Part shown: piece by piece, positions 23,701 through 47,427 of the stretch
Numbering within the stretch: the stretch's first letter is position 1
Layout: every line of letters begins with the position of its first letter
NCBI RefSeq assembly: GCF_039654945.1
Contig: NW_027361722.1
Location: 4,712,001 to 4,776,000, forward strand
Length of the DNA: 64,000 bases
Direction: 5' to 3'
DNA from: Dendrobates tinctorius
Taxonomy: Eukaryota
The notes under the pieces: model-generated
Told to the model about the DNA's origin: nothing
Databases searched by the model: none
The model's input: the letters and a program-made list of their open reading frames with translations, nothing else
Made by a program: the position numbers and the translations under genes

Positions 23701-26312
23701 GGTCTGTGTGCTGCTCGCCTTCCTGCGTGTCTGAGGTCTATGCGCGCTGCTCGCCTTCCTGCGCGTGGGCGGTCTATATGTGCTGCTCGCCTTCTTACGC
23801 GTCGGCGGTCTATATGCGCTGCTCGCCTTCCAGCGTTTCGGTGGTCTATGTGCGCTGCTCGCCTTCCTGCGCGTCGGCGATCGGGTGCACAGTAACAAGC
23901 CGCGATCGTTACTGGCGCTCCGAGAGAACATACAGCAAGACATTCAGGCTACGACCCCAGACCTCCTGCATATGGAGCGGCCGTGCTGGTGTGATTGGCT
24001 GAGGATAGTGGACATTTACCACACCGGCTTTATAATGTCCGTTTCTCATGGACCAAGTTATCTACAGTCCAATTTTCAGTACGATAAATCGTCCCTTTTA
24101 GACGATACAGTAATGTTTTCGGGTAAAGTAGCGAGTGAATTGCCCTGGAGTATTTGTGCAATGAGAAAACCAATTCACATGAGACTAAGCATAAAGAAGA
24201 GGGGAAGAAGTCTCCGCGGCCCCCAGTAACCCCGGAGTATGGTGTCTGCGGGGGCTGCACCATAAACGTCTCTCCCTAATAAGAACCCCAGTAATAGGTG
24301 AAGGCTCGTCACAGATTAATATAATTACCATGGAGACAAAGTAACAGATCAAGTAAAAAAAGAAAAAAACGTGTCGCCAGTCCGCACATTGTCACTACTC
24401 GCATTTCCCTTCCATGGGGGGTTTTGTCAGGAGGCCGAGGACCCTGGATAACTCTATACGAGCTAACGCCAGTGCGGTACTGTACAGAGCGGCCCAAAAT
24501 GACGATATGCCCCAACATCACACGCTCCACACTTGTCCGATTCCGGATCACATTGTTCTCCCTGAGATGAGCCGCCGGCAGACATTCCGGCAGAGGCTTT
24601 GTCATAGAAGACACGGGAGCACTAGGCCGGGTAAGAGACAGACAAGATGGCTGCCGGCTGAATGATCTGCCAAAGTCTGGAGGTGGACAAATTGGAGGCT
24701 GTGGTGTCAGCAGGATGACCTTCCTGTACATGACACCAGATGGGGGTCACCAAAGTGTTCTCTAATGCACCTGCTGAGCTTACACCACTGGCAGCACGGA
24801 GGACCCCTCTGGTCTTAGTGTCCCTCAGAGGACTGTCCCCCAATAGACGCATAGTCCCCTCCATGTGCCACCACTAGGGTTGATCGAATAGCTTCGGATA
24901 AGAGGTTATTTAAATAGCTGCCTTGGTGACCCGGATATCTGGAGCGCTCCTAATAATCAGCTGTTCGGCGTCGCGGCTGTGTGACAGTCACAACACATGT
25001 ATGGAGAGACTGCTTGTTGTGACGTCACACAGCCGCGACACATGCAGCTGCGGTGCCGGACAGCTGATCATCAGGAGCGCTCCAGCTATCCGGGTTCCCG
25101 ATGCAGCTATTCGGATAACCTCTAATCCACAGCTATTGGATTAGTCCTAGCCACCACCATGACAGGTCTCACCACGTACCGCGCCGCGCTGATTTCTAGT
25201 GAATGAGATGATTTTTGGAGGAATTATGTCCCTCAAATCCGGGCCCTCCGGGAGGCTTCTCCACTGTTTTCTTCCAATGTGGTGTACATGACTCCCCGGA
25301 TTATCAGCGGTGCCAGAGAACCTTATCGGCCCCCGATCTCATGGTCGTTGTGTGTCCGCCAGGGTTGTCTGTGATGTACGCTCTGTCTGTAAGAATCCTG
25401 ACTGCTGGGAAATCATCCACGGTAAAATAACGGCCCAGCCTCCACTCCACCATTACAGTAATATAACAGCCCGGCCTCCACTCTGCCCTTATGATAACGT
25501 AACGGCCCGGCCTCCGCTCCGCCGTTACAGTAACGTAACGGCCCGGCCTCCGCTCCGCCGTTACAGTAACGTAACGGCCCGGCCTCCGCTCCGCCGTTAC
25601 AGTAACGTAACGGCCCGGCCTCCACCACTGTAGTATAACAGCGCCTCATTATATGATTATGGCGCGGCGTTTCTCTGCCGTTCTTGACATTTGCAGTACT
25701 TGCTCTGTGACCACGATTTGTTTTCTTCTAGTCTTAGATCAGGAGGAGCCGAGTAATGGGGAGAAGAACGAGGAGAACTCTGAGGCTCCAGAGATGGACG
25801 GCTCCGATGTCACCTCCTACGAGATCTGTCTGAAGGAGAAACGGTGCGTGGCTCCTCGCACACATGACACCACCGCGCCACACATGACGCCGGCGTCTAT
25901 TCAGCGCACAGTGACGTCGCAGGCCGTCTGCACCTGATAATACACTTTACACAATCTCCGGTTGCTGTCAGTGAATCATCACTGGAAACCCAACTGTTCA
26001 TATTCAGTGACAGCAAGCGGCGATAATAGAGAACTGCAGACCCTGGATGAAATAAATCTAAGCGTTTCCTTGTCTCGCAGGTTTCGTGACGACTTCGGGC
26101 CGCTGCTCGAGGGCTGCACGTGTTACTGCTGCCGCAACCACAGCCGCGCCTACGTCCATCACCTCCTGACCGCCAAGGAGTTACTGGCCGGGATCCTCCT
26201 CATGATGCACAACTTCCAGCAATACTTCAGCTTCTTCCGATCGGTGCGTCAGGCGATGCGTGACGGGAAGTTCTCCGACCTAAAGCAGATGATCCAGAGA
26301 CAATCGTCCTGA
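14576..26312 (+). CDS. QTRT2: Queuine tRNA-ribosyltransferase accessory subunit 2, 8 coding exons, 413 aa
   Basis: join(14576..14778,17990..18045,20848..20924,21270..21479,21577..21776,22169..22320,25732..25843,26081..26312). GT-AG introns, phases consistent, 1242 nt. Motifs: [48 protein letters not shown], and the Zn site CTCYCC...MMHN. AATAAA at 26344-26349. A probable non-coding exon donor lies at 14332. Confidence 0.96.
14810..17935. repeat. 32/33/40-bp purine-rich minisatellite filling the first coding intron of QTRT2
   Basis: Core cacagaggatgtcaggagag; blocks of variant units. Confidence 0.96.
17990..18045 (+). CDS. QTRT2: QTRT2 coding exon 2
   Basis: [18 protein letters not shown]. 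Confidence 0.92.
18775..20034 (+). mobile_element. Tc1-like DD36E (Incomer-type) transposon, defective
   Basis: 27-bp TIRs CAGGGGTTGGACAAAATAATGGAAACA; TA on the left. Transposase runs from 18963 to about 19992 with a frameshift near 19400 and a TAG at 19852. FSDES...EDN-36aa-IIE. Confidence 0.9.
20848..20924 (+). CDS. QTRT2: QTRT2 coding exon 3
   Basis: [26 protein letters not shown]. Confidence 0.92.
21270..21479 (+). CDS. QTRT2: QTRT2 coding exon 4
   Basis: [12 protein letters not shown]...QCLSDGEV...[13 protein letters not shown]. Confidence 0.93.
21577..21776 (+). CDS. QTRT2: QTRT2 coding exon 5
   Basis: [14 protein letters not shown]...AELPEDKPR. Confidence 0.93.
22169..22320 (+). 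CDS. QTRT2: QTRT2 coding exon 6
   Basis: [37 protein letters not shown]. Confidence 0.93.
22580..23880. repeat. 34-bp CpG-rich minisatellite
   Basis: gcgctgctcgccttcctgcgcgtgggcggtctgt; homogeneous core with diverged edges. Confidence 0.95.
24875..25149. mobile_element. hAT-type palindromic MITE
   Basis: Ends TAGGGTTGATCGAATAGC...GCTATTGGATTAGTCCTA; perfect 8-bp TSD GCCACCAC at 24867-24874 and 25150-25157. Confidence 0.85.
25428..25640. repeat. 36-bp tandem repeat
   Basis: taacggcccggcctccgctccgccgttacagtaacg, about 5.5 copies. Confidence 0.9.
25732..25843 (+). CDS. QTRT2: QTRT2 coding exon 7
   Basis: VLDQEE...[11 protein letters not shown]. Confidence 0.88.
26081..26312 (+). CDS. QTRT2: QTRT2 last coding exon
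   Basis: [29 protein letters not shown]...IQRQSS*. Confidence 0.94.
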
Positions 26313-29339: not shown

Positions 29340-29620
29340 AGATATATAGATGAGCATCATCACCCCAATCCTCCTGTACGGCAGTGAAGTCCGGAGTCCT
29401 CACACATTCCCAAGGTGGGATTCCAGCCCAACAAAAATATTCCACCAGGAATTCTGTAAGACCCCGCTCCAAGTCCATCGGAGCACCTCCAACAGTGTCT
29501 GCTGGGCTGAATGAGGCAGGTTACCCAAAACCTCAGTATCCAGAAGAGGGCACTGTCCTTCCATGGTCACCAACGTAGGAGCAGTTCAAGCTTGCATTAC
29601 CATAAAGCCCTGCTACATGT
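29340..29620 (+). mobile_element. Degenerate non-LTR retrotransposon ORF2 fragment
   Basis: IITPILLYGSEV motif from the region C-terminal to RT. Confidence 0.45.
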
Positions 29621-29704
29621 AGGTGGTCGACCCAAACCAGGACCCCAGAACAGCCCAACCAAACCAGGACCACCAGAACAGCCCAACCAAACCCGTCCCA
29701 TGAG

Positions 29705-31445
29705 GAAGAGAGCAGTGCAGTATGTGAGCACATGGGAGAAAGCAGCACAGTATATGAGCGCTGGGGAGAGAGCAGTGCAGTATGTGAGCACGTGGGAGAG
29801 CAGCGCAGTATGTGAGTGTGAGGGAGAGAGCAGCGCAGTATGTGAGTGCAGGGGAGAGCGCAGCGCAGTATGTGAGCATGGGGGAGAGCGCAGCGCAGTA
29901 TGTGAGTGCAGGGGAGAGCGCAGCGCAGTATGTGAGTGCAGGGGAGAGCGCAGCGCAGTATGTGAGTGCAGGGGAGAGCGCAGCATGTGAGTGCAGGGGA
30001 GAGCGCAGCGCAGTATGTGAGTGCAGGGGAGAGCGCAGCGCAGTATGTGAGCATGGGGGAGAGAGCAGCGCAGTATGTGAGCATGGGGGAGAGCGCAGCG
30101 CAGTATGTGAGTGCTGGGGAGAGCGCAGCGCAGTATGTGAGCATGGGGGAGAGAGCAGCGCAGTATGTGAGTGCTGGGGAGAGCGCAGCGCAGTATGTGA
30201 GTGCTGGGGAGAGCGCAGCGCAGTATGTGAGTGCAGGGGAGAGCGCAGCGCAGTATGTGAGTGCTGGGGAGAGCGCAGCGCAGTATGTGAGCATGGGGGA
30301 GAGAGCAGCGCAGTATGTGAGTGCTGGGGAGAGCGCAGCGCAGTATGTGAGTGCAGGGGAGAGCGCAGTGCAGTATGTGAGTGCAGGGGAGAGCGCAGCG
30401 CAGTATGTGAGTGCAGGGGAGAGCACAGCGCAGTATGTGAGTGCAGGGGAGAGCGCAGCGCAGTATGTGAGTGCAGGGGAGAGCGCAGCGCAGTATGTGA
30501 GCATGGGGGAGAGAGCAGCGCAGTATGTGAGCATGGGGGAGAGCGCAGCGCAGTATGTGAGTGCTGGGGAGAGAGCAGCGCAGTATTTGAGCGTGGGGGA
30601 GAGAGCAGCACGGTATGTGAGCGCGGGGGAGAGTGCAGCGCGGTATGTGAGCACGGGGGAGAGAGCAGCGCGATATGTGAGCGTGGGGGAGAGAGCAGCG
30701 CAGTATGTGAGCGCAGTATTTGAGAGCGTGGGGGAGAGAGCAGCGCAGTATGTGAGCGTGGGGGAGAGAGCAGCGCAGTATTTGAGCGTGGGGGAGAGAT
30801 CATCGCAGTATATGAGCGCGGGGGAGAGAGCAGCGGAGTATGTGAGCGCGGGGAAGAGAGCAGCACAGTATGTGAGCGCGGGGGAGAGAGCAGCGCAGTA
30901 TGTGAGCGCGGGGGAGAGAGCAGCGCGGTATGTGAGCTCGGGGGAGAGAGCAGCGCGGTATGTGATTGTGGAGGAGAGAGTAGCGTAGTATGTGAGCGTG
31001 GGGGAGAGCAGCGCAGTATGTGAGCGCGGGGAGAGTGCAGTGCAGTATGTGAGCGTGGGGGAGAGTGCAGTATGTGAGCGTGGGGGAGAGTGCTGCGCAG
31101 TATGCGAGTGCTGGGGGAGAGTGGGGGAGAGAGCAGCGCAGTATATGAGTGTGGGGGAGAGAGCAGCGCAGTATATGAGTGTGGGGGAGAGAGCAGTGCA
31201 GTATGTGAGTGGAGGAGAGAACAGCGCTGTATGTGAGCGCGGGGGAGCAGCGCAGTATTTGAGAGCGTGGGGGAGAGAGCAGTGCAGTATGTGAGCGTGG
31301 GGGAGAGAGCAGCGCAGTATGTGAGCGTGGGGGAGAGAGCAGCGCAAAATGTGAGCGTGGGGGAGAGAGCAGCGCATTATGTGAGCGCGGGGGAGAGTGC
31401 AGTGCAGTATGTGAGCGTGGGGGAGAGTGCAGCGCAGTATGTGAC
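29705..31445. repeat. 30-bp minisatellite
   Basis: gagcgcagcgcagtatgtgagtgcagggga and variants. Confidence 0.95.
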
Positions 31446-31879
31446 CTGCCACCCCAACTCTCCTTGTCCACCATAGCAACCAATCACACTGCACCTTTCA
31501 TTTTACCAGCGAAAAAAAAAAAAAAAAAGCTGCGTTCTCATTGGTTGCTGTCGTAAACTGAAAGCTGAGCTCTGATTGGTCCCTGAGGAGCTGGTATATT
31601 TTACAGGTCTTGTAATATTGCCATATTGGGTAATGCATTGTGTGTATATAGATATTCTTGTGTTGAATAGATATAGGGAAAGTGTAGGGTTTAGATTTAG
31701 CCCACTAGGGGGGGGCACAATAGAGTAAGATAGGATTTAGCTCGCTAGCAGGGGCCGGCTGAGGGCGCTTCCTGGGAGTCTGGAGAAGGAGTGTGAGCCG
31801 GGAGCTCAAATATGAAAAAAAAAAAAATTATCGAACCTCCCCCTTTTTTACCCCATAAGGCTGGTCCTTAAGGGGTTAA

Positions 31880-32157: not shown

Positions 32158-33376
32158 CCCCTTAAGGACCAGCCTTATGGGGTATTTTGTTTGTGAATTT
32201 CTATTTTTCCCTCCCAGAGCCATAACTTTGTTATTTTTCCGTTAATATGGCCAAGTGAGGGCTTTTATTTGCGGGATGCGTTTAACCTTTGAATGACACC
32301 ATTGGTTTTACCATGCTGTGTACTGGAAAACGGGGAAAAAAAATTCAGTCAGGTGAAATTTTTTAAAAAAGTGCAAACCCATAAAAGTTTTTTTTTTTTT
32401 TTTTTTTTACCATGTTCACTAAATGCTAAGACTGCCACCTGCCAGTCTGATTCTCCAGGTGATTACGAGTTCACAGACACCAAACATGTCTAGCTTCATT
32501 TTTATTTAATCGGTGAAAAAAAATTTAAAACTTCGCTAAATAAAAAAATAAATTGCGTCATTTTCGAGACCCGCAGCGTCTCCATTTTCCGTGATCTCAG
32601 GTTGGGTGGGGGCTTATTTTTTGCGCACCGAGCTGACGTTTTTATTGATAGGATTTTTGATCGCCCATTATTGCATTTTGTTGCAATGTTGCAGCGATCA
32701 AAAAAATGTAATTCTGGCGTTTTGATTTTTTTCTCGTTACACCATTTACCAGTCGGAGTCATTATTTTTATATATTGATAGATTGGGCGATTTCGAACAT
32801 GGCGATACCAAATATGTCCATTTTTTTCTTGTTTTATTTTGAATGGGGCAAATGGGGGATGGTTTAAACTTTTATATTTTTTATTTTTTTAAAAACTTTT
32901 TTTTTTTTTTTACTTTCTACATTCTTCAATAGTCTCCATGGGAGACTAGAACTTGCAATCATCCGATCGTCTATGCTACACTTAGGGCTGCAGCCCTGCT
33001 CTATGTAGTAGAAATAGTCACTTGCTATGAGTGATGACCGCCGGGCGGCGCTCATAGTGATCCAGCAATGACAACCACAGGGGTCTCCTGCATTCCCCGG
33101 GTTGTCGTGACAATCCATTGGCGACCCATGATCATGTGACACAGGTGCCGATGGGCAGGAGACACTCGTGGTTGTCATTGCAGAGATTGACAGCGGCATG
33201 TAACATGTTAACAGCTGCGGGTGGAATGCAATTCCACCCGTGGCTGTTAGGGGGACATGAGAGCTGATCAGATCAGCTGTCATGTGCCGGAAAAGGTGCA
33301 GGCTCATGGCCGGAGCCCGCAGCAGACAGGAGGAGGCGTCCAATGTAGGGTATAGCCGGCATTGGAGGTTAAAGGG
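32158..33376. mobile_element. TTAA-flanked non-autonomous DNA element (piggyBac-like)
   Basis: TTAA|CCCCTTAAGGACC ... GGAGGTTAAAGGG|TTAA; non-coding interior. Confidence 0.5.
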
Positions 33377-35194
33377 TTAATAATAAAGAAAATAAATGAG
33401 CATATTTGTTATCGCCTCGTCCGTCAAAGTTGGATCTATCAATATACAATATTAATTAACCCAAACAGTAAATACTGTAAAGGGAAAAATAAACAAAAAG
33501 CCACAATAAAAAACATGTTAAATCTAACATAGGAAGGAACCAATAAAGCCGTTAGCTCACCACACGAGAAAATCCCTCAGCTCCATCGACGGAAAAGTAA
33601 GAAAGTTACTGATCTCAGAAAATGGCGACAATAACATTTTTTATTTTTCATTTACAAAATTCCAATTTCTTTTTTCATCCTTTAAATTAAAAAAAAAAAA
33701 GTAAAACTTTGGTATCGTAATGGCTCCAACCCGGAGAATCCTGCTTCCAGGTCATTTTTACGGCACAATAAGCGGAGTAAGAACAAATCCCCCAAACTTT
33801 GCTGGAACGGAGGATTGTTTTCGCTATTTCCCCCCATTTTTTCTTTTTTTCAGTCCATTTATATAATAAAGTGAATGGCGGCATCCAAAACCACAACTCG
33901 TCCCACAATAAACAATCCTCATGTATCCGTGGGGACCGAAAAATGAAAAAAGTTACAGCTCTTGAAAGGAGGAGAGGAAAAAAATGGAAGAGGAAAAACT
34001 AAAAATTGACTCTAGGGGTTGTCCAAGCATGTGATCATCTCAGTATCTGCCATACTCGGCAGCGGTCTCCCCGGTGGATCCAGCACAGGCTGATCCAGGC
34101 TTCACTGAAAGTGATGGCGTTCACGGGAAAGTGGAAGCCTGTGGTCAAGAGAAGTGACCATGGAGGGAGGGTAGTCTATTCCACCATCTGTATGGATGGG
34201 GGGCTCCTGCACTGATCACCTACTCACCTTAGGTGACGATCATAGCGCCTTGTCTCATATATGGGGGCACACTGACACTGCTCCAGTTCTGCGGTGATGG
34301 TGGGAGGAAAAGGCAAGGTTCCCAATTTTTGGTGTCTCATCACCTTGCAATCCTCATATAGAAGACATACGACATCCTAGATGATAGATCTGGAGGCACG
34401 GATGCTCTGGAGACCACGACCAGTGCAAAGATGATGCCCATATCTTGTGGTCCCCTAATCTGGAGTACCGTACAACAGAGCCCCAAACCTGAGGTGTGAA
34501 ATACTGAAGAGTGCCCCCAACAACCAGTCACATCAGTATGAGCAATGCTGCCCCCGATTAGTCCTTATACCCTAACGGGGGACAGGAGGCTCCAACCAGA
34601 ACCTTTGACATCATCACACTTAATTTAGGGGTGGTACTCCTCATAGATCTTCCTGAGATTGTGCACCCCCTGCTCCAGCAGTCTCCTCTTCATTTTTGCA
34701 TATGTATTGAACGTGGACCCATCATTCTAGACCTTTTTGATTAGTGGGGGTCCAACTGCTAGGACTCTTATCACATCCCCACTAGAAGGAAACTGCAGAG
34801 CGCATGCTCAACCGTTATTCACTACGGGCCTCACTTTCTCCAGTGGCCCCGCAGGGAATTGTGATCAGTGGGGGTCTGACTGTAAGATACATGATAGCTT
34901 CTACATTCTTGAATACCCCTTTAAACATTGTTCTGAGCTGTGGCCCCATCTTTTCCTTTGTTTTCTATAGTTGGAGCTCCAGAACTGACCCCTGAATGGA
35001 GATTGGATCTGTCCAAGGAGAGTGTCAGACCCCGAAAAAAGCCTGGCAGTATGGCGGACTCTTTTAAATCTATACCTTGTGTAAATATTCACACCTGTGT
35101 AGACTAACTTGTAAGTATCAGTCTCGTCTCCCCCACAGATGTTCTCGTGTGGTTTATACGTTTCCTCCTCTATAGATTCTGTACACAGTAACTT

Positions 35195-35316
35195 CCTCTG
35201 CTCACTTCTCTGGTATCTGATGGTGAGGACCCCGGACCTCTGCTCACTTCTCTGGTATCTGATGGTGAGGACCCCGGACCTCTGCTCACTTCTCTGGTAT
35301 CTGATGGTGAGGACCC
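35195..35316 (+). repeat. Triplicated 42-bp unit upstream of the TIGIT ATG
   Basis: cctctgctcacttctctggtatctgatggtgaggaccccgga at 35195, 35237 and 35279. Confidence 0.9.
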
Positions 35317-35338
35317 TGGGCCCCTGCGCTACCCCACA

Positions 35339-35399
35339 ATGACTCCACATTCCAGGGACTGGGCTCTGCAGATGATTGTCTTCCTCCTCCCCACCATCG
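35339..35399 (+). CDS. TIGIT: TIGIT exon 1 (signal peptide)
   Basis: MTPHSRDWALQMIVFLLPTI, then a phase-1 donor G|GTGAGT; joins exon 2 to give ...PTIVVAVAETF. Confidence 0.72.
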
Positions 35400-38300
35400 G
35401 TGAGTCCCAATGTTACCAGGCTTTATCGAAATTAATTCTCACCTACTCTTTCAAGAGCTCTGCTTGCTGGCAGTGAATGTTTGCATAGTTTCGGGTCCTC
35501 CGATGTTCACGTCTTACAGAAGGCACCAATGTCTGGCACTACGTAGGTACACAAGGTATGACGTCCACATGCAGGACCGGCTCCAGGTTTCTACGGCCAT
35601 TGGTCGACCCAGTGGGCTCCTCTTTTTTATTTTTCTCTCCTCTTCTCCTGAGATCCAGAACTTTTTTTTATTTTTCTGGTGATAGAGTTCTATAAGGGAT
35701 TATTTTACGGTACAAACTGTAGTTTTTATCACTTCCATTTTGGGGTCCATGCAACTTATCTGAACTCCGCAAAATAAATTGAGGTGTTGCAGTCTGGAAA
35801 GACACGCCGCATGTGTGTCTCCGCAGGGAAGCCGCGGGTGTCGGAGCACGCATAGTGGACATGGGATTTCTTGAAATCCCATCCACTATGCTGAAACATC
35901 TGGCTGCTGTGGGTTGGATGCTGTGGATGTACGCAGCGTCCAACCCACAGCATTTACTGACCGTGGGAACATACCCGTATAGTATGTGCACACGATCAGG
36001 AATTGCTCAGGATTTGACGCAGGTGAAATCTGCATCTGAGGTCACTGGCAGGTCACCTGCGTTTTTGATGCGTTGTTTCATTGCATGCGTTTTTTTTTGC
36101 CACTTGAAATAAAGCTAATTGAAAGTTAGCTTCTGGGAAGTAAAAAAAAGTGATTTCCTGTATTCAGATATATTGGGGTATGTGCACACGGTCAGTAAAC
36201 GCTGCGGGTTGGATGCAGCGTACATCCGAAATGTCCAACCTACAGCGTCCAGCTGTTACAGTGTAGTGGATGGGAATTCAAGAAATCCCATGCCCAATAT
36301 GTGTGCACTGATGCCCGCGGCTCACCCGTAGAGAAGGACATGAGGCGCATCTCTCCAGACCGCAGCATGTCAATTTATGTAGTGGAGACGCTCCATCTCC
36401 GCTGTGTAAATTACACATTCTCTATCATTAGATGCGGTAAAACTGCATTATCTTCCTAATCACATGTGTGTTACAGTGGGTACGGAAAGTATTCTGACCC
36501 CTTTAAATTTTTCACTCTTTGTTTCATTGCAGCCATTTGGTAAATTCAGAAAAGTTCATTTTTTCCTCATTAATGTACACTCTGCACCCCATCTTCACTG
36601 AAAAAAACAGAAATGTAGAAATATTTGCAAATTTATTAAAAAAGAAAACCTGAAATCCCACATGGTCATAAGTATTCAGCCCCTTTGCTCAGACACTCAT
36701 ATGTAAGTCACATGCTGACCCTTTCCTTGTGATCCTCCTTGAGATGGTTCTTCTCCTTCATTGGAGTCCAGCTGTGTGTAATTCAACTGATAGGACTTGA
36801 TTTGTAAAGGCGCACACCTGTCTATATAAGACCTCACAGCTCACAGTGCATGTCAGACCAAATGAGAATCATGAGGTCAAAGAAACTGGCCAAGGAGCTC
36901 AGAGGCAGAATTGTGGCAAGGCACAGATCTGGCCAAGGGTACAAAAGAATTTCTGCAGAGCACAGTGGCCTCCATAATCCTTAAATGGAAGAAGTTTGGG
37001 ACCACCAGAAGTCTTCCTAGACCTGGCCGTCCAGCCAGAGCAATCGTGGGAGAAGAGCCTTGGTGAGAGAGGTAAAGAAGAACCCCAAGATCACTGTGGC
37101 TGAGCTCCACAGATGCAGTAGGGAGATGGGAGAAAGTTCCACAAAGTCAACTATCACTGGAGCCCTCCACCGATCGGGCCTTTATGGCAGAGTGGCCCGC
37201 CGGAAGCCTCTCCTCAGTGCCAGATATATGAAAGCCCGCAGAGAGTTTGCTTAAAAACCACATGAAGGACTCCCAGACTATGAGAAATAAGATTCTGCGG
37301 TCTGATGAGGCGAAGATAGAACTTTTTGGTGATGATTCTAAGCGGTATATGTGGAGAAAACCAGGCACTGCTCATCACCTGCCCAATACAATCCCAACAG
37401 TGAAACATGGTGGCAGCATCATGCTATGGGGGTGTTTTTCAGCTGCAGGGACAGGACTGGTTGCAAATGAAGGAAACTTGAATGAGGCCAAGTACAGAGA
37501 TATCCTGGATGAAAACCTCTTCCAGAGTGCTCTGGACCTCAGACTTGGCCAAAGGTTCACCTTCCAACAAGACAATGACCCTAAGCACACAGCTAAAATA
37601 ACAAAGGAGTGGCTTCAGAACAACTCTGTGACCATTCCTGACTGGCCCAGCCAGAGCCCTGACCTAAACCCAATGGAGCATCTCTGGAGAGACCTGAAAA
37701 TGGCTGTCCACCAACGTTCACCATCCAACCTGACGGAACTGGAGAGACTCTGCAAGGAAGAATGGCAGAGGATCCCCAAATCCAGGGGTGAAAAACTTGT
37801 GGCATCATTCCCAAGACGACTCATGGCTGTACTAGCTCAAAGGGGCTGAATACTTATGACCATGTGATATTTCAGTTTTTCTTTTTTAATAAATTTGCAA
37901 AAATTTCTACATTTCTGTTTTTTTCAGTGAAGATGGGGTGCAGAGTGTACATTAATGAGGAAAAAATGAACTTTTGTGAATTTACCAAATGGCTGCAATG
38001 AAAGAGTGAAAAATTTAAAGGGGTCTGAATACTTTCCATACCCACTGTATATATGTTCCATGCACTGGAATCAGAGGTGTATATACCATACACTCATGGT
38101 TAGTTCCCCTGTAACCGGCCTAGTAGTGGACCCACCCGCAGCCGCGTCCATCATTTGTCAGTCACTTACGTAATTGTCCTGACAATTTGAGGAAGCAAAG
38201 TTGTGTCTCTGTGACAAACTGGTTTCAGCGATGGGATCTGTGTGACCCCCCTCCCCCTGGCTATTCCCTTGACAAACACCTGCAGAAAAATATGCACTGC

Positions 38301-41300
38301 ACAATTAATAAATAATTACGTCAACATTGTCAGGAAAATATGAAGTATTTCCTATTGCCCTAAGGTACACATACAGAGCTCCTGCTGCCCCACCCCCATT
38401 TGGTTTGTGCAGTGTAACACTGAGCTTCACAATGCAGCCACTCTATCTATTCTATCCCCTCTCCCACCTTCCTTCAGCAGTATGGTCAATTTTACTACCC
38501 AGACCAGTGTAGAGCAGTTTATCCCTCCAAGATTTATATTTCCTTTGTCTATTCCAGGTCGAATTTAATAAAACACAATAATCCGAGAGACAGAAAAAAT
38601 ATATTTTCAGAATCGGTATAAGTAAAGCTACACACAGCAGCGTTTTGTGGCTTACAGGGTCCTCAGAAATTGGAGAAATAGTTTCAGCGCCGCAGTAGCC
38701 CGCAGACATGGCATATTTGGTCTCAAAAGAAAGACAATTTCATAAGAGAAAATATAATGCCCCTGCTGTCACTCTGTGAGCCCCCCAGCCAGAGGTATGG
38801 CAAGTAGAAGTTTTTAATAACTTTCCAAAAGGGGTGTACATCCTCTAACACAGCCCACCAAGTGAGGTCAGCAATGGAGGAGTCCCTAAGTTTATGGGCA
38901 AACTGTAAAACAGGAACAGCCATTTTGTAGGGTTTTCAGACCTGGGGATGACAGCGAACATCCATGCTGTGGACTGAATCCTTCTGTTTGGAAACCCCCC
39001 CTCCCCTCATCGACACGCCATACCAGTGACTGAGATGTAGTAAGTTTCTTATTTTAATCCCTTTTATTTCTTACTGTCTGTACATACTGTATTTTGTCTC
39101 CATGTGTAATATCTTTTGTATTTTTGTAAACACTGCCTATATTTTCTGGCGTAAACTTATAAATTTACTAGTTTCGTTCTTTTGCGCTATGATCGAACCG
39201 ACACATACTCCGTGCCAAAACACGCCACCTTTTGGGTTGGTTCCTGGCCCAATATAGGTTTTGATATCAAAAGAGGAACTGGTGGCAGCATTGCATCCTG
39301 GTAGTATTAGGGAACCCTGGCTGCGACGGATCGGAGGATATGTGTGTATTCCCTGCCTGGGACTGGTGATCTACATACCGCCCTCACTGCAGAGTGCCTG
39401 ATAGCCAGTACGCGACAAGGCAGCCTTTCCGGCAACTACTTAGCCTAGGTGCAGTTCCCTGACTGACCTGAGGGGATAAGGGGGTTATCTTCCCCCTAAC
39501 CTTGACAAATATAAATTAATTAGCTATTCCTCTCTCTTCCTGAATTCATTACCCTGCCAATTCACAGGTCATTGTCCTGTGTGTGTCCCCCCATAAATGG
39601 TCTGTAATCACATTGTGATTTCCCCCCAAGTTCTCTCTCCCATGCCAAGAAAACAGAAAAACATTCACCAATTGACGAACCCGCATGGCGCCGCTTTCCT
39701 GATCGCTATTGGTTTCTTGTAGCATGATTCTTGCTGAATGACACAGGATGGGTGACAACAACACTGTGCCACCTACGTCATATAGAAGGCGCTGAGCAAG
39801 AAGCCAAGGATGGCGCTCTGCAGCTTTCCTTCTATTATCATGGAGTGGCGCTGAGGGAAGGTGTTCTTCGCTCCCTGCCCAATGCTGCGCTAACAGTGAA
39901 GAAGTCACGTTTAATGAGGGCAGTCTGACTGTGGACCCCTGTACATCCACCCCAGGTGGTAGCCCAGATTGCCCTTATTATAATCCTCCCCTGGTCACTA
40001 CTTTCTCTAATAGTAGGAAGGACAATGAGAACTCACAGGCTTTCTCTACTAGTAGGTAGGGACGCTTTAGTCTCACCCCTGATCCTGCCTGGAATTGACC
40101 CACTTGAGACCAGAATTTATGCGATTTTTACACCTGAGCAGTCATGCATGCCATAGAATACTAGAATGTTAGAGTTGGATGGGACCCCCGGGTCATCAGG
40201 ACCTCCAGGGTCATCGTGTACAACCCCCTGCTCAATGCTGGATTCACTAAACCATCTCAGACAGATGTCTGTCCAGCCTCTGAAGATTTCCATGGAAGGA
40301 GAACTCACCACCTATTGTGGCTGCCTGTTCCACTCATTGATCACCCTCACTGTCAAAAAGTTTTTCTAAGGCTATGTGCACACGGTGCGTATTCTGCGTA
40401 GGAATTTTCAGCGCAGAATTTACTAAAGCCGCAGGTCAAATGACCTGCATTTTTTCTGCGGATTTAGTGCTTTTTTGGTGCAGTTTCACTGCATGTTTTG
40501 TGCGGTTTTCCACCTGCGGATTTCTAGAATGGAGCAGGTGGAAAACTGCAGCAAAAGCGCACAAAAGAAGTGACATACTGCTTTTTTCATTCTGCACCAA
40601 ATCCACGCGGAAAAAAAGCAGCATGTGCACAGCGGATTTTGTTTCACATAGGCTTTAATGCTACTGTACATCACATGCAGTTCCGCTGCATATATGCAGG
40701 GCCAAATCCGCTGCGTATATGCAGCAGAATCCGCACTGTGTGCACATAGCCTCATATCCAATTTGCATCTTCTCCCTTTTCAGTTTCATTCCATTGCTTC
40801 TCGTATTTCCATGTGCGAATGAGAATAATGATGATCCCTCTACACTGTGACAGCCCTTCAGATGTTAGTAGACAGCTCTTAGGGTATGTGCACACGCTGC
40901 GGTTTCTGCTGCGTTTCTGCAGCGTTTTTGGCTCTGCAGAAACGCAGCAGATTTTGCTGCGTTGTACAGTACCTTTATTTCCTATGGAAATAAAAAAAAG
41001 CTGTGAACATGCTGCGTTTTTTTCCGCGCGGTTTTGCTGCGGTTTACAATCCGCAGCATCTCAATTGTTTGGTGCAGAAACGCTGCAGTTTTACACCTCA
41101 TCCATTATGAGGTGTAAAACCGCAGGGCAAAACCGCAGAAAAAACGCAGATAATCCGCAGAAAAACCGCAGCACTTTGTCCTGCGGATTTCCTGCGGTTT
41201 TCTCTACAAAATCCGCAGAGACTAAAAACTACGTGTGCACATACCCTTAGTCTCCTTATTTCCAAGCTAAACATTCCCAGACCCTTTATATGTTTCTCGT

Positions 41301-44300
41301 AGGACATACTTTGCAGTCCGCTCACCATCCTTGTAGCTCTTCTCTGAACTTGCTCCAGTTTTTTCAATGTCTTTTTTAAAATGTGGTGCCCAGAACTGGA
41401 CCCAGTATTCCAGATGTGGCCTGACCAAGGAGGAGTAGAGGAGGATAAGGACTTCACATGATCTAGACTCTATGCTTCTCTTAATATATCCTAGAACTGT
41501 GTTTGATTTTTTTGCTGCTGCATCACACTGTTGACTCATGTACAGCCTGTGATCTATTAGTATACCCAAGTCTTTTTCACACCTGCTGTTGCTTAGTTCT
41601 ATTCCTCCCATTCTATAGATGCAATTTTAGTTTTTCTTGCCCAGATATAGAATCTCACATTTCTCCCTCTTAAATACCATTCTACTAGTCACTGCCTATC
41701 GTTCAAGCTTATCTAGATCCTTCTGAATCCTTTCTCTGTCTTCTCTAGTGTTAGCTATCTCTCCAAGCTTTACATTGTCTGCAAATTAGATTAGTTTATC
41801 TTCAGTTCCCAATTCCCAGAGTTGCCCAGACCAATTTTCACAACCACCGTCAGTACAGAGTCCTGTGCAGTACAGAGAGGAAGTCTCCAGTGCAGCAGCT
41901 TCGACTTCCTGTACTCAGTGTTGGCTTTACATCCTTTTATTGATTAGTTGATGCTATTCTGTAGGACAGTGGTGGGAGTTGAGGGGGCCATGGATCATTC
42001 TGGAATATTCTGCTGACAGAGGGTCTTTAATATTTACAGTAGTTGCTGTGGCGGAAACGTTCCTCAGAACGCAGAATATTACAGCTACAGACGGCAGTAG
42101 TGTCACCCTGAGGTGTCAGCTCCTCATACAGGACACCAAAGTTGTCCAAGTCAACTGGAACTTCTGCAACGATCTGCACATCGCGTATCATGTGAATGAC
42201 CATGAGACTGAGGGAATGGTGATGTCGGCATTCTCAGACCGGGTGACCCTGGCAAACGATTATGGGATTGTCATCTCAGACGTCAGCAGGAACGATACCG
42301 GCCAGTACTGCTGCGTCTTCAACACCTTCCCACATGGAGTATATACCGGGAGGATTTACCTACAGGTTGTATGTACGTATCACATAGGATCAATTTAGAT
42401 ACATGGCTCAGGAGTCAATATCACACGTGAAGGGCTTAGATACACCAGAACCGAGATTACACTCTATGACTTGGTGTTTTACTCTTTTTTTCTCCAGCAG
42501 AGGACTCTTGGACACGTGGACCTTATCTTTGGATCGGATCAGGACTTGGGATCCTTCTTGTGGTCACAGTTATCGTCACCGGGAGTTTCTATTACAAGGT
42601 GAAGCGCAAATAGAGTGAGTTGTGTCTACAGCCAGACGGGGCAGGAAGGAGTCATGTGGGGTCACTACTTTTATCCAATGTCACCCCCCCAGATATGAAG
42701 TCTAGAGATGGGCAGACACCTGGATGCTCGGGTCTGGTGGGTTCGGCCGAACAGTTACAAAAAGGTTGGGTTCGGGTACCAGAACAGTACTTGAATGAGG
42801 GGCTTGAACATCCAGTGTTTGCCACGCTGTCATTACTGCCGATCAGAGAGCCGCGGATCTCGCGCTGTCAAAAGACCGCGTGAGCCAGCAGCTGTGATCG
42901 GCGGTATAAAGTTTACCTCTGGTCACTGGTGTCAGCTGATGGGACTACCACTCCCATCAGCCTACTCCTACTAATAACAGCAAGAGCAGGAGCGGCTGAT
43001 GAGTGTATTCATTAGACGGCTCCAGAGCTGTAAATAATCATTTAAAAAAAAAAAAACGGTGTGGGTTCCCCCAGTATTTTTGATAACCAGCCAGGCAAAA
43101 CTCACAGCTGGGGGCTGCAACCCTCTGCTGTCAGCAGGCCCGAATTGGTAATATGCCCAACCGGGCCGCTGTCATGTGGGCCACGGGCGGCAGCACCTGC
43201 TCATCTGGCCGCTTGCCAGCTGATGCGGCCACTGGCCTGGCTGTTGTCCCTGCCGCCGGCCCTCTCTGCAGGCACGGCGGTTATAGTTTACAATCCTTCT
43301 GGGATTTTTCTATCCCTCACTGCAGGAGGGAGATAAGCCGCCACGCCTCCCCCAACGCACCCCATCCTCGCCCTAGCATGAGACCTCCCCCCCACCCCCG
43401 CAGCCACTCACAGCGCCGCTTGCCTGCTCTCTTCTCTGTACACAGGACCTGTGATGAGGTCACAGGAGGGGAGGAGTCAGGGGGTCACATGATCAGGAGT
43501 CTTTGTCCAGACCCCTGACTCCGCCCCTCCTGTGACCTCATCACAGGTCCTGTGCGCACAGCTCTGCCTCTTGGTGTCTGCAGGACTCTGCTGTGCTGGT
43601 TGTCATGTTGCTGGATGAGGGAAGTATGTGTGGGGTCAGGAAGGGTTTACAGGGTAGATGTAGCCGAGCCGTGTGTGTACGAGGTGTACGGAGCGGAGCC
43701 ATGTGTGCACGAGGTGTACGGAGCGGAGCCGTGTGTGTACGAGGTGTACGGAGCGGAGCCGTGTGTACGAGGTGTACGGAGCGGAGCCGCGTGTGTACGA
43801 GGTGTACGGAGCAGAGCGTGTGTGTACGAGGTGTACGGAGCGGAGCCGTGTGTGTACGAGGTGTACGGAGAGGAGCCGTGTGTACGAGGTGTACGGAGCG
43901 GAGATGTGTGTGTACGCGGTGTACGGAACGGAGCCGTGTGTGTACGAGGTGTACGGAGCGGAGCTGTGTGTGTACGAGGTGTACAGAGCGGAGCCGTGTC
44001 TACAAGGTGTACGGAGTGGAGCCGTGTGTACAAGGTGTACGGAGCGGAGCCGTGTGTACAAGGTGTACCGAGAGGAGCCGTGTGTGTACGGAGTGGAGCC
44101 ACATGTGTACGGGATGTACGAAGCATACAAAGCGGGCTTTTCCCACGGACACAGGAGTACACGGCGGAGCCCCGAGGAGCATTTTAAAACTCACACATGA
44201 CGTTCCACCGGAAATGATGTGCTGGAAGCTGACCAGAAATGAGGTAATTTCATGAGGAAATTGTGTCGGAACTAGGAATGCTTCAGATCCATCACCATGT

Positions 44301-45614
44301 CCTCCTCTGACAGCGCAGACAGCAGGATCGCCTTGGAATCGGGGTTGCCGGCCATGTGAGCGGATCATATGTCCTGCATCGGGAGGCTCAGGTGGGCACT
44401 ACAATAGGAGCCGGGCTGCTATAGTATCTTTGTAGAATCTTTCTTTCTCATTCTCTTTTCTGTCTTTCCCTCATTTTCTTTCTATCTCTCTGTTCTTTCT
44501 TTCCCCTCTTTCTTTCTTTTTCTTTCCTCTCTTTCTCTCTGTTCTTTTTCTTTACTTCTTTCTTTCTCTCTTTGATCTTTCGTCTTTCTCTCTCTGTTCT
44601 TTCTTTCTCTCTCGCTCTCCTTTCTTTCTCTCTCTCTGTTTTCTCTCTTCCTCAGTACCAGTCAGTGTGATCAGCAGTGCTAAATGGGTGCGGTTGGGCG
44701 TGGACATGGTTGTAACTAGTTCCGAAATGGATGTGGCTGGGGAGTGGCCTAAAATGCGCAGCGCGCCGCAGTCTTTGTCCCTCTTTCCCTTCTTCAAAAC
44801 TTGATAGGTATGATAGGGGCGGCTATGACCAGGGGGGTCTGGTTGCCCAATGGATAGCAGTTCTGCCAGGAATTCTGTCACCGTGCGTACAAAAGGGGAC
44901 AGAGCTTTGGGAGGAGTACTATACCTAAAAGCAATAAATAGGACTGAGCTGAAATACTGGGCACAGCTGTGACTACATGTTATATAGTCGTGTTAATCTC
45001 CTCTCACTTCTTGTAACCTACAAGTGTACAAAAATATTGTATAGTCACCATATGACTAGTGGGCCTGTGTAACTTCAAATGCCAGGGCTGAATTTTAGTC
45101 CCAGTCCGGCCCTGGCTGTCAGCTTCAGCAAGGCTGGTCATCAAGAAAATTTTACCACCAATCAGAAGCACTGTTTGCTGCGCTGTCATGCACATGACTG
45201 CGTGACAAACACTCGGTGTTCGGGCAGCCGAACCCAAACAGTAACATGGACTTCCTGGTGAAGTCCATGTTTGGTGTCTGAGCCTGAACAACATGTGTTC
45301 GGTACGGATGCTGAACTTTACTGTTCAGGTTCGCCCAACTCTAATGAAGACGATTGCATAGACCCCCAACCTGGTCACTGTAGGTCCCAGATGGGTTTTA
45401 TTGTTACGGGGATGATGGCAGCCATTATATTGTGTAATTTTTTTTTTAGAAAAAGAAATCCGGTGCCTTCTACTCCAATGTCATGGCTAAGACACGAAGA
45501 GTTGGTCCCATAAGTGCGAATATCCCAAATTCAGCCCAGGTCATACCCACAGATGAAGACTCAGAGAGGGAAGTGAGCAATGAATACTTTAATGTCATCC
45601 TGTACAACATGTAA
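35339..45614 (+). CDS. TIGIT: TIGIT-like single-IgV type I membrane receptor (PVR/nectin-binding family), 4 exons, 219 aa
   Basis: join(35339..35399,42040..42372,42498..42598,45450..45614) = 660 nt. Encodes a signal peptide, an IgV domain (VVQVNW...DTGQYCCVFNTFPHGVYTGRIYLQV; human VTQVNW...DTGEYFCIYHTYPDGTYTGRIFLEV), a TM segment and a tail ending EYFNVILYNM*. AATAAA at 45672. Position and orientation next to QTRT2 match human synteny. Confidence 0.85.
36474..38047 (+). mobile_element. Tc1 DD34E transposon (Passport-like, long TIRs), defective
   Basis: TA TSD on both sides; about 200-bp TIRs starting CAGTGGGTACGGAAAGTATT. Transposase from 36871 with indels; SDEAKIELFG...QQDNDPKH-34aa-E. Confidence 0.92.
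40370..40751. mobile_element. Harbinger-type MITE within the CR1
   Basis: TIR GGCTATGTGCACAC; TAA/TCA flanks. Confidence 0.8.
40882..41246. mobile_element. Harbinger-type MITE within the CR1
   Basis: TIR GGGTATGTGCACACG; TTA TSD. Confidence 0.85.
42040..42372 (+). CDS. TIGIT: TIGIT exon 2 (IgV domain)
   Basis: Phase 1-1 Ig exon with VTLRC, W, DxGxYxC and the TFP key motif. Confidence 0.88.
42498..42598 (+). CDS. TIGIT: TIGIT exon 3 (transmembrane)
   Basis: EDSWTRGPYLWIGSGLGILLVVTVIVTGSFYYK|gt. Confidence 0.85.
43135..45114. mobile_element. Second hAT element nested in the first
   Basis: Ends CAGGCCCGAATTGG / CCAGTCCGGCCCTG; perfect 8-bp TSD GCTGTCAG. Carries a hairpin (about 43438-43558), a 30-bp minisatellite and a CT-rich tract. 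Confidence 0.8.
43665..44110. repeat. 28-30-bp minisatellite
   Basis: gagccgtgtgtgtacgaggtgtacggagcg. Confidence 0.92.
45450..45614 (+). CDS. TIGIT: TIGIT exon 4 (cytoplasmic tail)
   Basis: Poly-T acceptor; KKKSGAFYSNV...EVSNEYFNVILYNM*. Confidence 0.85.
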   Translation, partial: KKKSGAFYSNVMAKTRRVGPISANIPNSAQVIPTDEDSEREVSNEYFNVILYNM

Positions 45615-47427
45615 GACGCTGGAAATGCACAGACGTGTGCGCTCAGTGTCAGGAGGCTGCTGTCAGCTGTAAATAAAATATGGTCTTTCAGAAATAAATC
45701 ACATTTCCTAATTTTGTAAGACATCACCACAATATGCAGTGGTAACCTATACATGGATCTACAGAGAATGGAAACTACAGCCCCCAAACTTCTGCCAAGA
45801 CATGCTGGGAGTTGTGGTATTGAATAATAATTTATCACGTTGAGTCTGAATTCACCCTTGTGTCCAACAGAAAGTCTACTCATCTTCCAAACACAATGCA
45901 GCTTTTATTTTTCCAAAACTTTTGAAGAAATTAAAGCTGCCCTGTAATTGGTTGCTTTGGGTAACACGGAGAGAAATATTATCACTTTTAAAAAATATCC
46001 CCCTTTGGATAAGACCACCTCTTCTTCACACCAGATTTCTTGTGACAGATTTTTAGTTCCACCATACATTATACATGGTGGCCATGTTTTAACCTATTGA
46101 TGCAACTGATGGATTTTTGTGTGGTCATCTCAAAGTACATTACATATTAGCCAAGTGTGGGGGAGTAGTCATGCCTCCCAACCGTCCTGGATCTAGCGGG
46201 ACAGTCCAGAAGTTGGGGAACTGTACTGGGAGGTTGGAGGACTCAGATGAAGTAAAATATAATAGTGAAACCTACAGATCCTTCCGTCACCATTCTGTCT
46301 GGGTAAAGATGGAGGAGAGACCTGCATCTCAGGAGGAAATGGTGGAAAGACCTGTGGGGGTGTCATCCTGTTTGGAAAAATAAACAATAAGTATAAACTA
46401 GGGGAAATATATTGTGTGGAGGAGACCGTCGAGGAATCATGTGCGGGAACTGTGAGCGCAGCATGCTGTGTGTGGTAGACATTGGTGTATGGTAAATTTC
46501 CCCACATAGTATAGTGCCTCCACAGTTGTGTGTGGTAATCAATGTGCCATAATGGAGGGAAGAGTAAATACAAATATGCAGTTTGCATCTTAACATATTA
46601 TGGGGACATCATACTGTGTGTGGGGGAATGTACTGTGGGGACATCATACTGTGTGTGGGGGAATGTACTGTGGGGACATCATACTGTGTGTGGGGGAATG
46701 TACTGTGGGGACATCATACTGTGTGTGTGGGGGAATGTACTGTGGGGACATCATACTGTGTGTGTGGGGGAATGTACTGTGGTTACATCATACTGTGTGT
46801 GGGGGGGAATGTACTGTGGGACATCATACTGTGTGTGGGGGGGAATGTACTGTGGGACATCATACTATGTGTGGGGATAATGTACTGTGGGACATCATAC
46901 TGTGTGTGTGGGGGAATGTACTGTGGGACATCATACTGTGTGTGTGGGGGAATGTACTGTGGTTACATCATACTGTGTGTGGGGGGGAATGTACTGTGGG
47001 GACATCATACTGTGTGGGGGGGAATGTACTGTGGGGACATCATACTGTGTGTGGGGGAATGTACTGTGGGGACATCATACTGTGTGTGTGGGGGAATGTA
47101 CTGTGGTTACATCATACTGTGTGTGGGGGGGAATGTACTGTGGGACATCATACTGTGTGTGGGGGGGAATGTACTGTGGTTACATCATACTGTGTGTGGG
47201 GGGGAATGTACTGTGGGACATCATACTGTGTGTGGGGGAATGTACTGTGGGGACATCATACTGTGTGTGGGGATAATGTACTGTGGGACATCATACTGTG
47301 TGTGGGGGAATGTACTGTGGGGACATTATATACTGTGTGTGGAGGAATGTACTGTGGGGACATCATACTGTGTGTGGGGGAATGTACTGTGGGGACATCA
47401 TACTGTGTGTGTGGGGGAATGTACTGT

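What the first reader, a model, noticed from the sequence alone, without database searches (positions are those of the whole stretch)
35339..45614. Amphibian TIGIT ortholog with a rewired tail: two YxN motifs and a truncated ITIM
A complete 4-exon receptor, mostly missed by the ORF track. The tail keeps the ITT-like EYFNV (human DYFNV, a Grb2/SHIP1 recruitment site). Where human has the ITIM LSYRSL it ends ILYNM*, so the Y+3 hydrophobic residue is missing. It also has a second, membrane-proximal FYSNV. Inference: signalling relies on Grb2-type YxN motifs rather than a canonical ITIM, which bears on how this checkpoint evolved and on amphibian immunity.
Basis: partly seen in the sequence, partly recalled or inferred. 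Interest (0 to 1): 0.7.

Follow-up and report, generated by a model that had tools for sequence, protein, structure and literature searches.

The report
Poison-frog TIGIT with truncated ITIM tail
This is the dyeing poison frog's copy of the immune checkpoint receptor TIGIT, already annotated in RefSeq; its expressed tail keeps the key YFNV signalling motif, has lost the classical ITIM by ending two residues after the tyrosine and has gained a second YxN motif, a pattern shared by hyloid frogs but not by ranid or myobatrachid frogs.

Summary
Window 35339-45614 (+) encodes a 219-aa type I receptor in four GT-AG exons: 35339-35399, 42040-42372, 42498-42598 and 45450-45614. The spliced translation is identical to RefSeq TIGIT isoform X1 of Dendrobates tinctorius (XP_073433181).

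- **Expression:** cDNA contigs from four runs in three studies join exon 3 to exon 4 and read through to the stop. The tail FYSNV ... EYFNVILYNM* is therefore expressed.
- **Identity:** the IgV exon matches human TIGIT structures at E 4e-18. The next family scores 7e-7, and CD96, CD226 and PVR score 1e-3 or worse.
- **A decoy:** a transmembrane-like ORF at 45329-45433, directly before exon 4, is not an exon.

The interpretation needs narrowing, because the rewired tail is not amphibian-wide. Ten of eleven hyloid tails from six families end in ...LY[NSH]M* or ...LNNM*, and most hyloids carry the extra proximal YxN. Myobatrachoid frogs (ILYKDI), ranids (IPYGSL) and mammals (LSYRSL) keep a canonical ITIM at the same spacing. 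The ITIM loss is therefore derived in Hyloidea.

The Y-F-N of the ITT-like motif is invariant from frog to mouse. This agrees with human data that the ITT-like motif, not the ITIM, carries inhibition. Grb2-type signalling remains an inference. Interest is moderate: an annotated gene with an undescribed lineage-specific tail variant.

The parts
35339..35399 (+). Exon 1: start codon and signal peptide (MTPHSRDWALQMIVFLLPTI + first base of the next codon), donor gtgagt
   Evidence: Sequence; splice sites; identical to the N-terminus of RefSeq X1 P0133
42040..42372 (+). Exon 2: IgV (V-set) ligand-binding domain. It carries the conserved Q57, the T-F-P motif, two N-glycosylation sequons (NIT, NDT) and the Cys46/Cys112 pair.
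   Evidence: Pfam V-set E 3.8e-10. phmmer to nine human TIGIT PDB sequences E 4e-18 to 1.4e-17 over 104 residues. RNA-type runs hold about 0.48 of the sampled words of 41900-42500, roughly the exon's share of that stretch.
42498..42598 (+). Exon 3: stalk and transmembrane segment (SEDSWTRGPYLWIGSGLGILLVVTVIVTGSFYYK), acceptor ttctccag, donor gtgaag
   Evidence: tblastn of P0001 and P0004; sequence. Its last 30 letters sit directly before exon 4 in cDNA contigs of three runs. Conserved in all frog orthologs.
45450..45614 (+). Exon 4, coding part: cytoplasmic tail KKKSGAFYSNV...EYFNVILYNM and the TAA stop (45612-45614); acceptor T10-AG
   Evidence: Sequence; cDNA contigs without mismatch from 45448/45450 onward in 4 runs; equals the RefSeq X1 tail
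45468..45482 (+). Membrane-proximal FYSNV, a second YxN (ITT-like) motif found only in hyloid frogs
   Evidence: Present as [FS]Y[STA]N[VITS] in 11 of 13 hyloid sequences. The Asn is kept even in the two that lack the Tyr. Absent from myobatrachoids, ranids, Hyperolius and mammals.
45582..45596 (+). ITT-like motif EYFNV (human DYFNV, Y225)
   Evidence: Y-F-N are invariant columns in the frog-plus-mammal alignments
45597..45614 (+). ILYNM plus stop: the ITIM position, with Y-2 = I and the Tyr kept but no Y+3 because the protein ends at Y+2
   Evidence: Sequence. The same TAA at the same place in a cDNA contig of another hyloid frog, L002. Canonical ILYKDI and IPYGSL at this position in myobatrachoids and ranids.
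45573..45580 (+). Internal donor (GAA|gtgagc) used by RefSeq isoform X2. It splices to a terminal exon at window-equivalent 65655-65687, outside the window, which encodes IQQKPTPVIT*.
   Evidence: P0001 sequence; the exon located in L001 at 33317-33349; donor sequence. Not seen in the four runs laid.
45615..45698 (+). Short 3' UTR with AATAAA at 45672 and 45693; cDNA contigs end at 45683-45698

Best explanation
This is the single-copy TIGIT gene of Dendrobates tinctorius. It encodes a type I receptor with one PVR-family IgV domain, a transmembrane helix and a 55-residue tail, and it is expressed as RefSeq isoform X1.

The tail architecture is a derived state of hyloid frogs:
- The ITT-like motif (E-Y-F-N-V) is untouched.
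- The ancestral ITIM six residues downstream has lost its Y+3 position, because the reading frame stops after Y-N-M.
- A second Y-x-N motif has appeared next to the membrane.

The most likely mechanism is inferred, not shown. Ligand-induced clustering would lead to phosphorylation of the ITT-like tyrosine, and probably of the proximal YxN tyrosine. These would dock Grb2-type SH2 adaptors and, through them, SHIP-1-like effectors. There would be no canonical ITIM/SHP-1/2 docking at the C-terminus.
For: Shown:
- The exon structure and translation are identical to XP_073433181.
- cDNA contigs from 4 runs in 3 studies join exon 3 to exon 4 and read to the stop.
- The IgV matches human TIGIT at E 4e-18, with an 11-order gap to the next family.
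- A frog-only profile finds mammalian TIGIT next.
- Y-F-N is invariant across frogs and mammals, and the Y-to-Y spacing is 6 as in human.
- Ten of 11 hyloid tails from 6 families end at ...LY[NSH]M* or LNNM*. The stop sits at the same codon in an independent hyloid transcript.
- Canonical ITIMs occur at the homologous site in Mixophyes, Pseudophryne, Aquarana, Lithobates and mammals. The loss is therefore derived.

From the literature:
- In human T cells, Y225A and N227Q (ITT-like) reduce TIGIT inhibition and Y231A (ITIM) does not. Y225 is the main phosphosite (PMC10439114).
- Grb2 is a ligation- and phosphotyrosine-dependent TIGIT neighbour (bioRxiv 10.1101/2025.05.08.652881).
Against: - No biochemical or functional data exist for any frog TIGIT.
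- The last 12 residues are the most conserved part of hyloid tails (0.86 mean column identity against 0.54 for the middle). The terminal L-Y-x-M may therefore still do something rather than being a dead ITIM.
- In some hyloids the proximal motif also fits the ITIM consensus (VFYSNI, SFYTNI).
- Orthology rests on similarity and architecture. No synteny could be checked, because the window holds only transposon ORFs besides this gene. No tree with frog CD96, CD226 or PVRIG was built.
They rest on the RefSeq model, on the contig-length arithmetic (543 nt upstream of exon 4 = 495 coding + 48 UTR) and on ortholog conservation.
Confidence: 0.8

Rival explanations
1. The C-terminal L-Y-N-M-COOH is not a decayed ITIM but a repurposed, selected docking site. 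It could be a non-canonical SH2 site or a class II PDZ-type Phi-x-Phi C-terminus. On this reading the tail was switched rather than simply reduced.
For: The terminal 12 residues are the best conserved part of the hyloid tail (0.86 against 0.54). The stop codon position is conserved between D. tinctorius and an independent hyloid transcript. The PDZ protein SdcBP/syntenin is a phosphotyrosine-dependent neighbour of human TIGIT.
Against: Ranitomeya has ILNNM, with the tyrosine lost. Rhinoderma reads on past the M. Much of the conservation may belong to the adjacent ITT-like motif. No PDZ or SH2 binding to such a terminus was tested, and the PDZ idea comes from general motif knowledge only.
Confidence: 0.2
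2. The membrane-proximal F-Y-S-N-V/I is a relocated ITIM (hydrophobic Y+3) rather than a Grb2-type site. Phosphatase recruitment would then persist from a new position.
For: Y+3 is V or I in 7 of the 11 hyloids that carry the Tyr. Dendropsophus (VFYSNI) and Engystomops (SFYTNI) match the full ITIM consensus.
Against: Three of the four dendrobatoid sequences have T at Y+3 (FYSNT, FYANT, FYTNT). D. tinctorius has A at Y-2. The position conserved in every hyloid, even those without the Tyr, is the Asn at +2, which is the Grb2 determinant.
Confidence: 0.15
3. It is not TIGIT proper but another single-IgV member of the PVR-like family, or a frog-specific paralog, that shares an ITT-like motif as CD226 does.
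For: CD226 also has an ITT-like motif that binds Grb2 (PMC4647266). The AX6G 'lock' motif is not kept to the letter: frogs have three extra residues in that loop. No synteny or paralog tree was obtained.
Against: PDB matches are TIGIT at 4e-18, against CD96 1.3e-3, CD226 1.7e-3 and PVR 7e-3. The gene has a single IgV and four coding exons. [DE]YFNV is followed by x-x-Y at the TIGIT spacing, and canonical ITIMs occur in the ranid and myobatrachoid orthologs that cluster with it. RefSeq names all of them TIGIT.
Confidence: 0.04

Closest known systems
Mammalian TIGIT (human, chimpanzee P0060, mouse P0111; PDB 3UCR, 3UDW, 5V52)
   Same: - Single PVR-family IgV: 28-31 % full-length identity, and E 4e-18 for the IgV.
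- Conserved Q57 (human Q56) and T-F/Y-P.
- Both N-glycosylation sequons line up with human N32 and N101.
- Type I transmembrane protein.
- [DE]YFNV ITT-like motif, with a second Tyr 6 residues later.
   Different: - The tail is 55 residues against about 80.
- There is no Y+3 residue after the second Tyr because the protein ends (ILYNM* against LSYRSL...).
- There is an extra membrane-proximal YxN.
- The loop holding the AX6G motif has a 3-residue insertion.
- The key motif has F instead of Y (TFP against TYP).
TIGIT of non-hyloid frogs (Mixophyes, Pseudophryne, Aquarana, Lithobates)
   Same: Same gene and architecture, 44-49 % identity, and the same EYFNVI core.
   Different: They keep a canonical ITIM (ILYKDI or IPYGSL) with 3-4 further residues after it, and they have no proximal YxN. 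Hyperolius independently lost the ITIM tyrosine.
CD226/DNAM-1 (PMC4647266)
   Same: A PVR-family receptor whose signalling depends on a Grb2-binding ITT-like YxN motif and which has no ITIM. In motif content, the hyloid TIGIT tail resembles this more than mammalian TIGIT does.
   Different: CD226 has two Ig domains, is activating, and its IgV is only distantly similar (E 1.7e-3).

Membership tests
TIGIT | Single V-set Ig domain most similar to TIGIT rather than to CD96, CD226, PVRIG, PVR or nectins | tested here: met
   Pfam V-set. PDB phmmer gives TIGIT 4e-18, IgLON 7e-7, nectin-3 4e-4, CD96 1.3e-3, CD226 1.7e-3 and PVR 7e-3. The first non-frog hits of the frog profile are mammalian TIGITs.
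TIGIT | PVR-family signature motifs in the IgV: (V/I)(S/T)Q, AX6G, T(F/Y)P (motif definitions from general knowledge) | tested here: inconclusive
   TFP is present and P118 is invariant. The Q of the first motif is invariant, but D. tinctorius reads VVQ where other frogs read VTQ or VIQ. The A...G loop is 3 residues longer than in human, so AX6G is not kept to the letter.
TIGIT | Type I membrane protein with signal peptide, one transmembrane helix and a short cytoplasmic tail | tested here: met
   Hydrophobic N-terminus in exon 1. Exon 3 encodes LWIGSGLGILLVVTVIVTGSFYY followed by KKKK. The tail is 55 residues. Judged by eye; no predictor was run.
TIGIT | ITT-like motif Y-x-N-V in the tail (human Y225/N227) | tested here: met
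   EYFNV at 45582-45596; Y, F and N are invariant in frogs and mammals.
TIGIT | ITIM (I/V/L/S)-x-Y-x-x-(I/V/L), human LSYRSL, which gives the protein its name | tested here: not met
   ILYNM then stop, so there is no Y+3 residue. No ITIM match anywhere in the D. tinctorius tail. The motif is present in ranid and myobatrachoid orthologs, so this is a secondary loss within the family, not evidence against orthology.
TIGIT | Conserved chromosomal neighbourhood (synteny) | not testable with these tools
   The 64-kb window holds only this gene and repeat or transposon ORFs.
TIGIT | Binds PVR/CD155-type ligands and inhibits lymphocytes; expressed on T and NK cells | not testable with these tools
   Only the presence of spliced transcripts in coded runs is shown. 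Tissue and cell type are unknown.

The most novel reading that the evidence does not exclude
Hyloid frogs, more than half of all frog species (species share from general knowledge), carry a natural 'ITIM-less, double ITT-like' TIGIT. Its motif content is closer to the activating paralog CD226 than to mammalian TIGIT.

Its signalling output could therefore differ in kind: Grb2-only, weaker inhibition, or even ambivalent or co-stimulatory. The conserved L-Y-x-M C-terminus could be a new docking site.
Probability: 0.1. Interest if true: 0.65.

Novelty: new variant of a known kind. Interest (0 to 1): 0.35.

Why it matters
TIGIT is a clinical checkpoint target, and which tail motif carries its signal is still debated. 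Human mutagenesis points to the ITT-like motif rather than the ITIM.

The frog comparison gives an independent, evolutionary reading of the same question. Y-F-N is invariant from frogs to mammals. The ITIM has been truncated in Hyloidea, and its tyrosine was lost outright in Ranitomeya and Hyperolius.

That supplies natural tail variants for chimeric-receptor tests. It also cautions against assuming ITIM-type inhibition when interpreting amphibian immune transcriptomes, for example in chytrid studies.

The gene itself is ordinary and already annotated.

Tried and rejected
1. **The transmembrane-like ORF at 45329-45433 as exon 3: rejected.**
   - It abuts the exon-4 acceptor.
   - Reaching the tail frame from it needs a 16-22 nt intron and gives TAA at the join.
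   - Changing the T10 run by plus or minus 1-2 bases also runs into a stop.
   - No cDNA contig covers it.
   - The real exon 3 is at 42498-42598.

2. **A three-exon model that reads the TM frame through to ...RHEELVP\*: rejected** for the same reasons.

4. **The third word-based protein search was swamped by mammalian TIGITs.** Among the 120 of 162 hits listed there was no Xenopus, pelobatoid, salamander, caecilian, reptile or bird sequence. That says nothing about their absence.

6. **Five full-text searches found no paper on amphibian TIGIT tails.** The one comparative checkpoint paper I opened (PMC5413580) does not treat them.

7. **A Pfam scan of the other long ORFs in the window found only Tc1/mariner pieces.** No synteny evidence could be had.

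8. **No structure prediction was run**, because the sequence match to solved TIGIT IgV domains is already decisive.
Full report
**What is in the sequence**

Reading the DNA and splicing in a script gives four exons with GT-AG introns of 6640, 125 and 2851 nt:
- 35339-35399: signal peptide, phase 1.
- 42040-42372: IgV.
- 42498-42598: stalk and transmembrane helix, ending in phase 0.
- 45450-45614: cytoplasmic tail.

The 219-aa product is identical to P0133. [quoted passage not shown] The locus fetched for that protein (GCA_039654945.1, JAYMGB010000124.1) has the same sequence as the window over the stretch the two share. The window therefore comes from the dyeing poison frog, and the gene is already annotated.

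**A trap next to exon 4**

Directly upstream of exon 4 there is an ORF (45329-45433) with a convincing hydrophobic stretch followed by a run of ten T and AG. It looks like a transmembrane exon but cannot be one.
- The tail frame is closed by TAG at 45447-45449.
- Any donor in that ORF would leave a 16-22 nt intron, and a phase-1 join gives TAA.
- Altering the homopolymer length also hits a stop.

The T10-AG is simply the acceptor of exon 4. The true transmembrane exon was found by tblastn with the orthologs.

**Expression**

Both run searches returned runs of one organism that hold about half of the sampled words of stretches that are about half exon. I laid four of them, from three studies, on 44700-46500. 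That stretch was chosen to stay clear of the minisatellite in intron 3. In one search:
- Contigs of 778, 778 and 731 nt (X2, X3, X29) match 45448-45683/45698 without a mismatch.
- Each carries, directly before that, the 30 letters that end exon 3. This string is unique in the window, at 42567.
- A 246-nt contig in X30 starts at 45450.
- All four read through the internal donor at 45572|45573 to the stop and end near the two AATAAA signals.
- None covers 45310-45431.
- In the 778-nt contigs (X2, X3), the 543 nt upstream of exon 4 equal 495 nt of exons 1-3 plus 48 nt of 5' UTR.

The runs are labelled RNA only as a guess. The spliced join and the empty intron show that they are cDNA. They rest on the RefSeq model and on ortholog conservation.

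**Identity**

- The IgV exon is a V-set domain.
- Against all PDB chains, the nine best matches are human TIGIT (E 4e-18 to 1.4e-17, 104 aligned residues).
- The next family is IgLON at 7e-7. Nectin-3 scores 4e-4, CD96 1.3e-3, CD226 1.7e-3 and PVR 7e-3.
- A profile made only of frog sequences retrieves mammalian TIGITs as its first non-frog hits.
- In the alignment with chimpanzee and mouse TIGIT, several features are kept: Q57 (human Q56), the T-F/Y-P motif, the disulphide cysteines and both glycosylation sequons.
- The loop carrying the AX6G motif is three residues longer in frogs.
- The tail has [DE]YFNV followed six residues later by a second tyrosine, exactly as in human (Y225 and Y231).
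- Synteny could not be checked. The other long ORFs in the window are Tc1/mariner remnants or repeats.

**The tail in context**

They do not describe amphibians in general. The tails compare as follows.

| Group | Species sampled | C-terminal end | Membrane-proximal YxN |
|---|---|---|---|
| Hyloidea, typical | Dendrobates, Phyllobates, Anomaloglossus, Dendropsophus, Hyla, Bufo, Engystomops, Leptodactylus, one unnamed Logan transcript | ...EYFN[VI][IV]LY[NSH]M, then stop | present in all nine |
| Hyloidea, variants | Ranitomeya; Rhinoderma | ILNNM (tyrosine lost); reads on as LYNNMSDGK... | present; absent (SSNI) |
| Myobatrachoidea | Mixophyes, Pseudophryne | EYFNVILYKDIYTI (full ITIM) | absent |
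| Ranidae | Aquarana, Lithobates | EYFNVIPYGSLRAH (full ITIM) | absent |
| Hyperoliidae | Hyperolius | EYFNVIINN... (ITIM tyrosine lost) | absent |
| Mammals | chimpanzee, mouse, cow, armadillo | [DE]YFNVLSYRSL... (full ITIM) | absent |

- Two further hyloid sequences have incomplete or doubtful C-termini. Eleutherodactylus carries the proximal YxN; Pristimantis has QSNI there, keeping the Asn but not the Tyr.
- The proximal motif reads [FS]Y[STA]N[VITS] in 11 of the 13 hyloid sequences. The Asn is kept in all 13.
- The superfamily assignments of Dendrobates, Rhinoderma, Mixophyes and Hyperolius were checked in the NCBI taxonomy.
- In the independent hyloid transcript L002, the TAA sits at the same codon, and the 3' UTR behind it is alignable by eye with that of D. 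tinctorius.

Three outgroups share a canonical ITIM at the homologous position. The truncation and the extra YxN are therefore derived states of Hyloidea. The Y-F-N of the ITT-like motif is the only tail element invariant across all sequences.

**How it probably works**

Shown here: the motif content of the expressed protein and its phylogenetic distribution.

From the literature:
- In human T cells, mutating the ITT-like motif (Y225A, N227Q) reduces TIGIT inhibition and Y231A does not. Y225 is the main phosphosite (PMC10439114).
- Grb2 is a ligation-, phosphotyrosine- and TCR-dependent TIGIT neighbour (bioRxiv 10.1101/2025.05.08.652881).
- The same motif type in CD226 drives activation through Grb2 (PMC4647266).

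Inferred: hyloid TIGIT signals through its two YxN tyrosines and cannot dock tandem-SH2 phosphatases at its C-terminus in the canonical way. SH2 recognition of an ITIM uses the Y+3 residue (general knowledge).

Two observations keep alternatives open:
- The last 12 residues are the most conserved part of hyloid tails (0.86 mean column identity against 0.54 in the middle).
- In some hyloids the proximal motif also fits the ITIM consensus.

**The second isoform**

RefSeq X2 (P0001) leaves exon 4 at the internal donor GAA|gtgagc (45572|45573). It joins a terminal exon about 20 kb downstream at window-equivalent 65655-65687, outside the window, which encodes IQQKPTPVIT*.
- X2 removes both C-terminal tyrosines and adds none.
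- X2 was not seen in the four runs laid. Contigs cannot exclude it.

**Novelty and score**

The gene is known to annotation. The five full-text searches I ran found no description of amphibian TIGIT tails. The one comparative checkpoint paper I opened does not treat them.

What is new is modest: a lineage-wide, expressed TIGIT variant that lacks the motif the protein is named after, plus independent evolutionary support for the primacy of the ITT-like motif. I rate interest at 0.35. The earlier notes of this scan near this place concern other features and did not bear on this one.

Noticed in passing
window 45329-45433 (+): A transmembrane-like ORF (...GFIVTGMMAAIILC) directly before the T10-AG acceptor of exon 4. 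It mimics a TM exon but cannot be spliced in frame and has no cDNA cover.
   Followed up: yes
window 36464-38093: A Tc1/mariner remnant in intron 1. The DDE_3 transposase ORF is at 37247-37849. It is flanked by inverted copies: the same peptide is encoded on opposite strands at 36464-36601 and 37924-38061. A second Tc1 HTH ORF lies at 18924-19598.
   Followed up: partly
window 43662-44090, 44438-44649 and 46601-47427: A 30-bp minisatellite (about 15 copies) and a (TCTT)n tract in intron 3, and a 35-37-bp satellite (23 copies) downstream of the gene. All produce long spurious ORFs in several frames.
   Followed up: partly
window 44760-45150: A dispersed repeat inside intron 3. All four cDNA runs cover it at high depth, with the same four differences from the window. 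The transcripts therefore come from other copies, not from this intron.
   Followed up: no
window 35190-35342: Tandem copies of about 45 bp just 5' of the start codon, each with ATGGTGAGG. The last copy gives a 12-codon upstream ORF (MVRTLGPCATPQ*) whose TGA overlaps the main ATG. In Ranitomeya isoform X2 the equivalent ATG is in frame.
   Followed up: no
L001 33317-33349 (window-equivalent 65655-65687, outside the window): The alternative terminal exon of RefSeq isoform X2, encoding IQQKPTPVIT*. This isoform would keep only the membrane-proximal YxN.
   Followed up: partly
P0006 (Rhinoderma darwinii) and P0003 (Ranitomeya imitator) tails: Rhinoderma reads past the hyloid stop (LYNNMSDGK...), and its Y-N-N-M resembles the CD28 YMNM motif. 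Ranitomeya has lost the terminal tyrosine (ILNNM). Either could be an annotation or assembly effect; neither was checked at DNA level.
   Followed up: no
window 14458-18219, 22685-24229 and 29511-31494: G+C-rich, strongly skewed repeat blocks with ORFs of up to 1253 aa open in several frames and no credible Pfam match. They look like satellite arrays.
   Followed up: no
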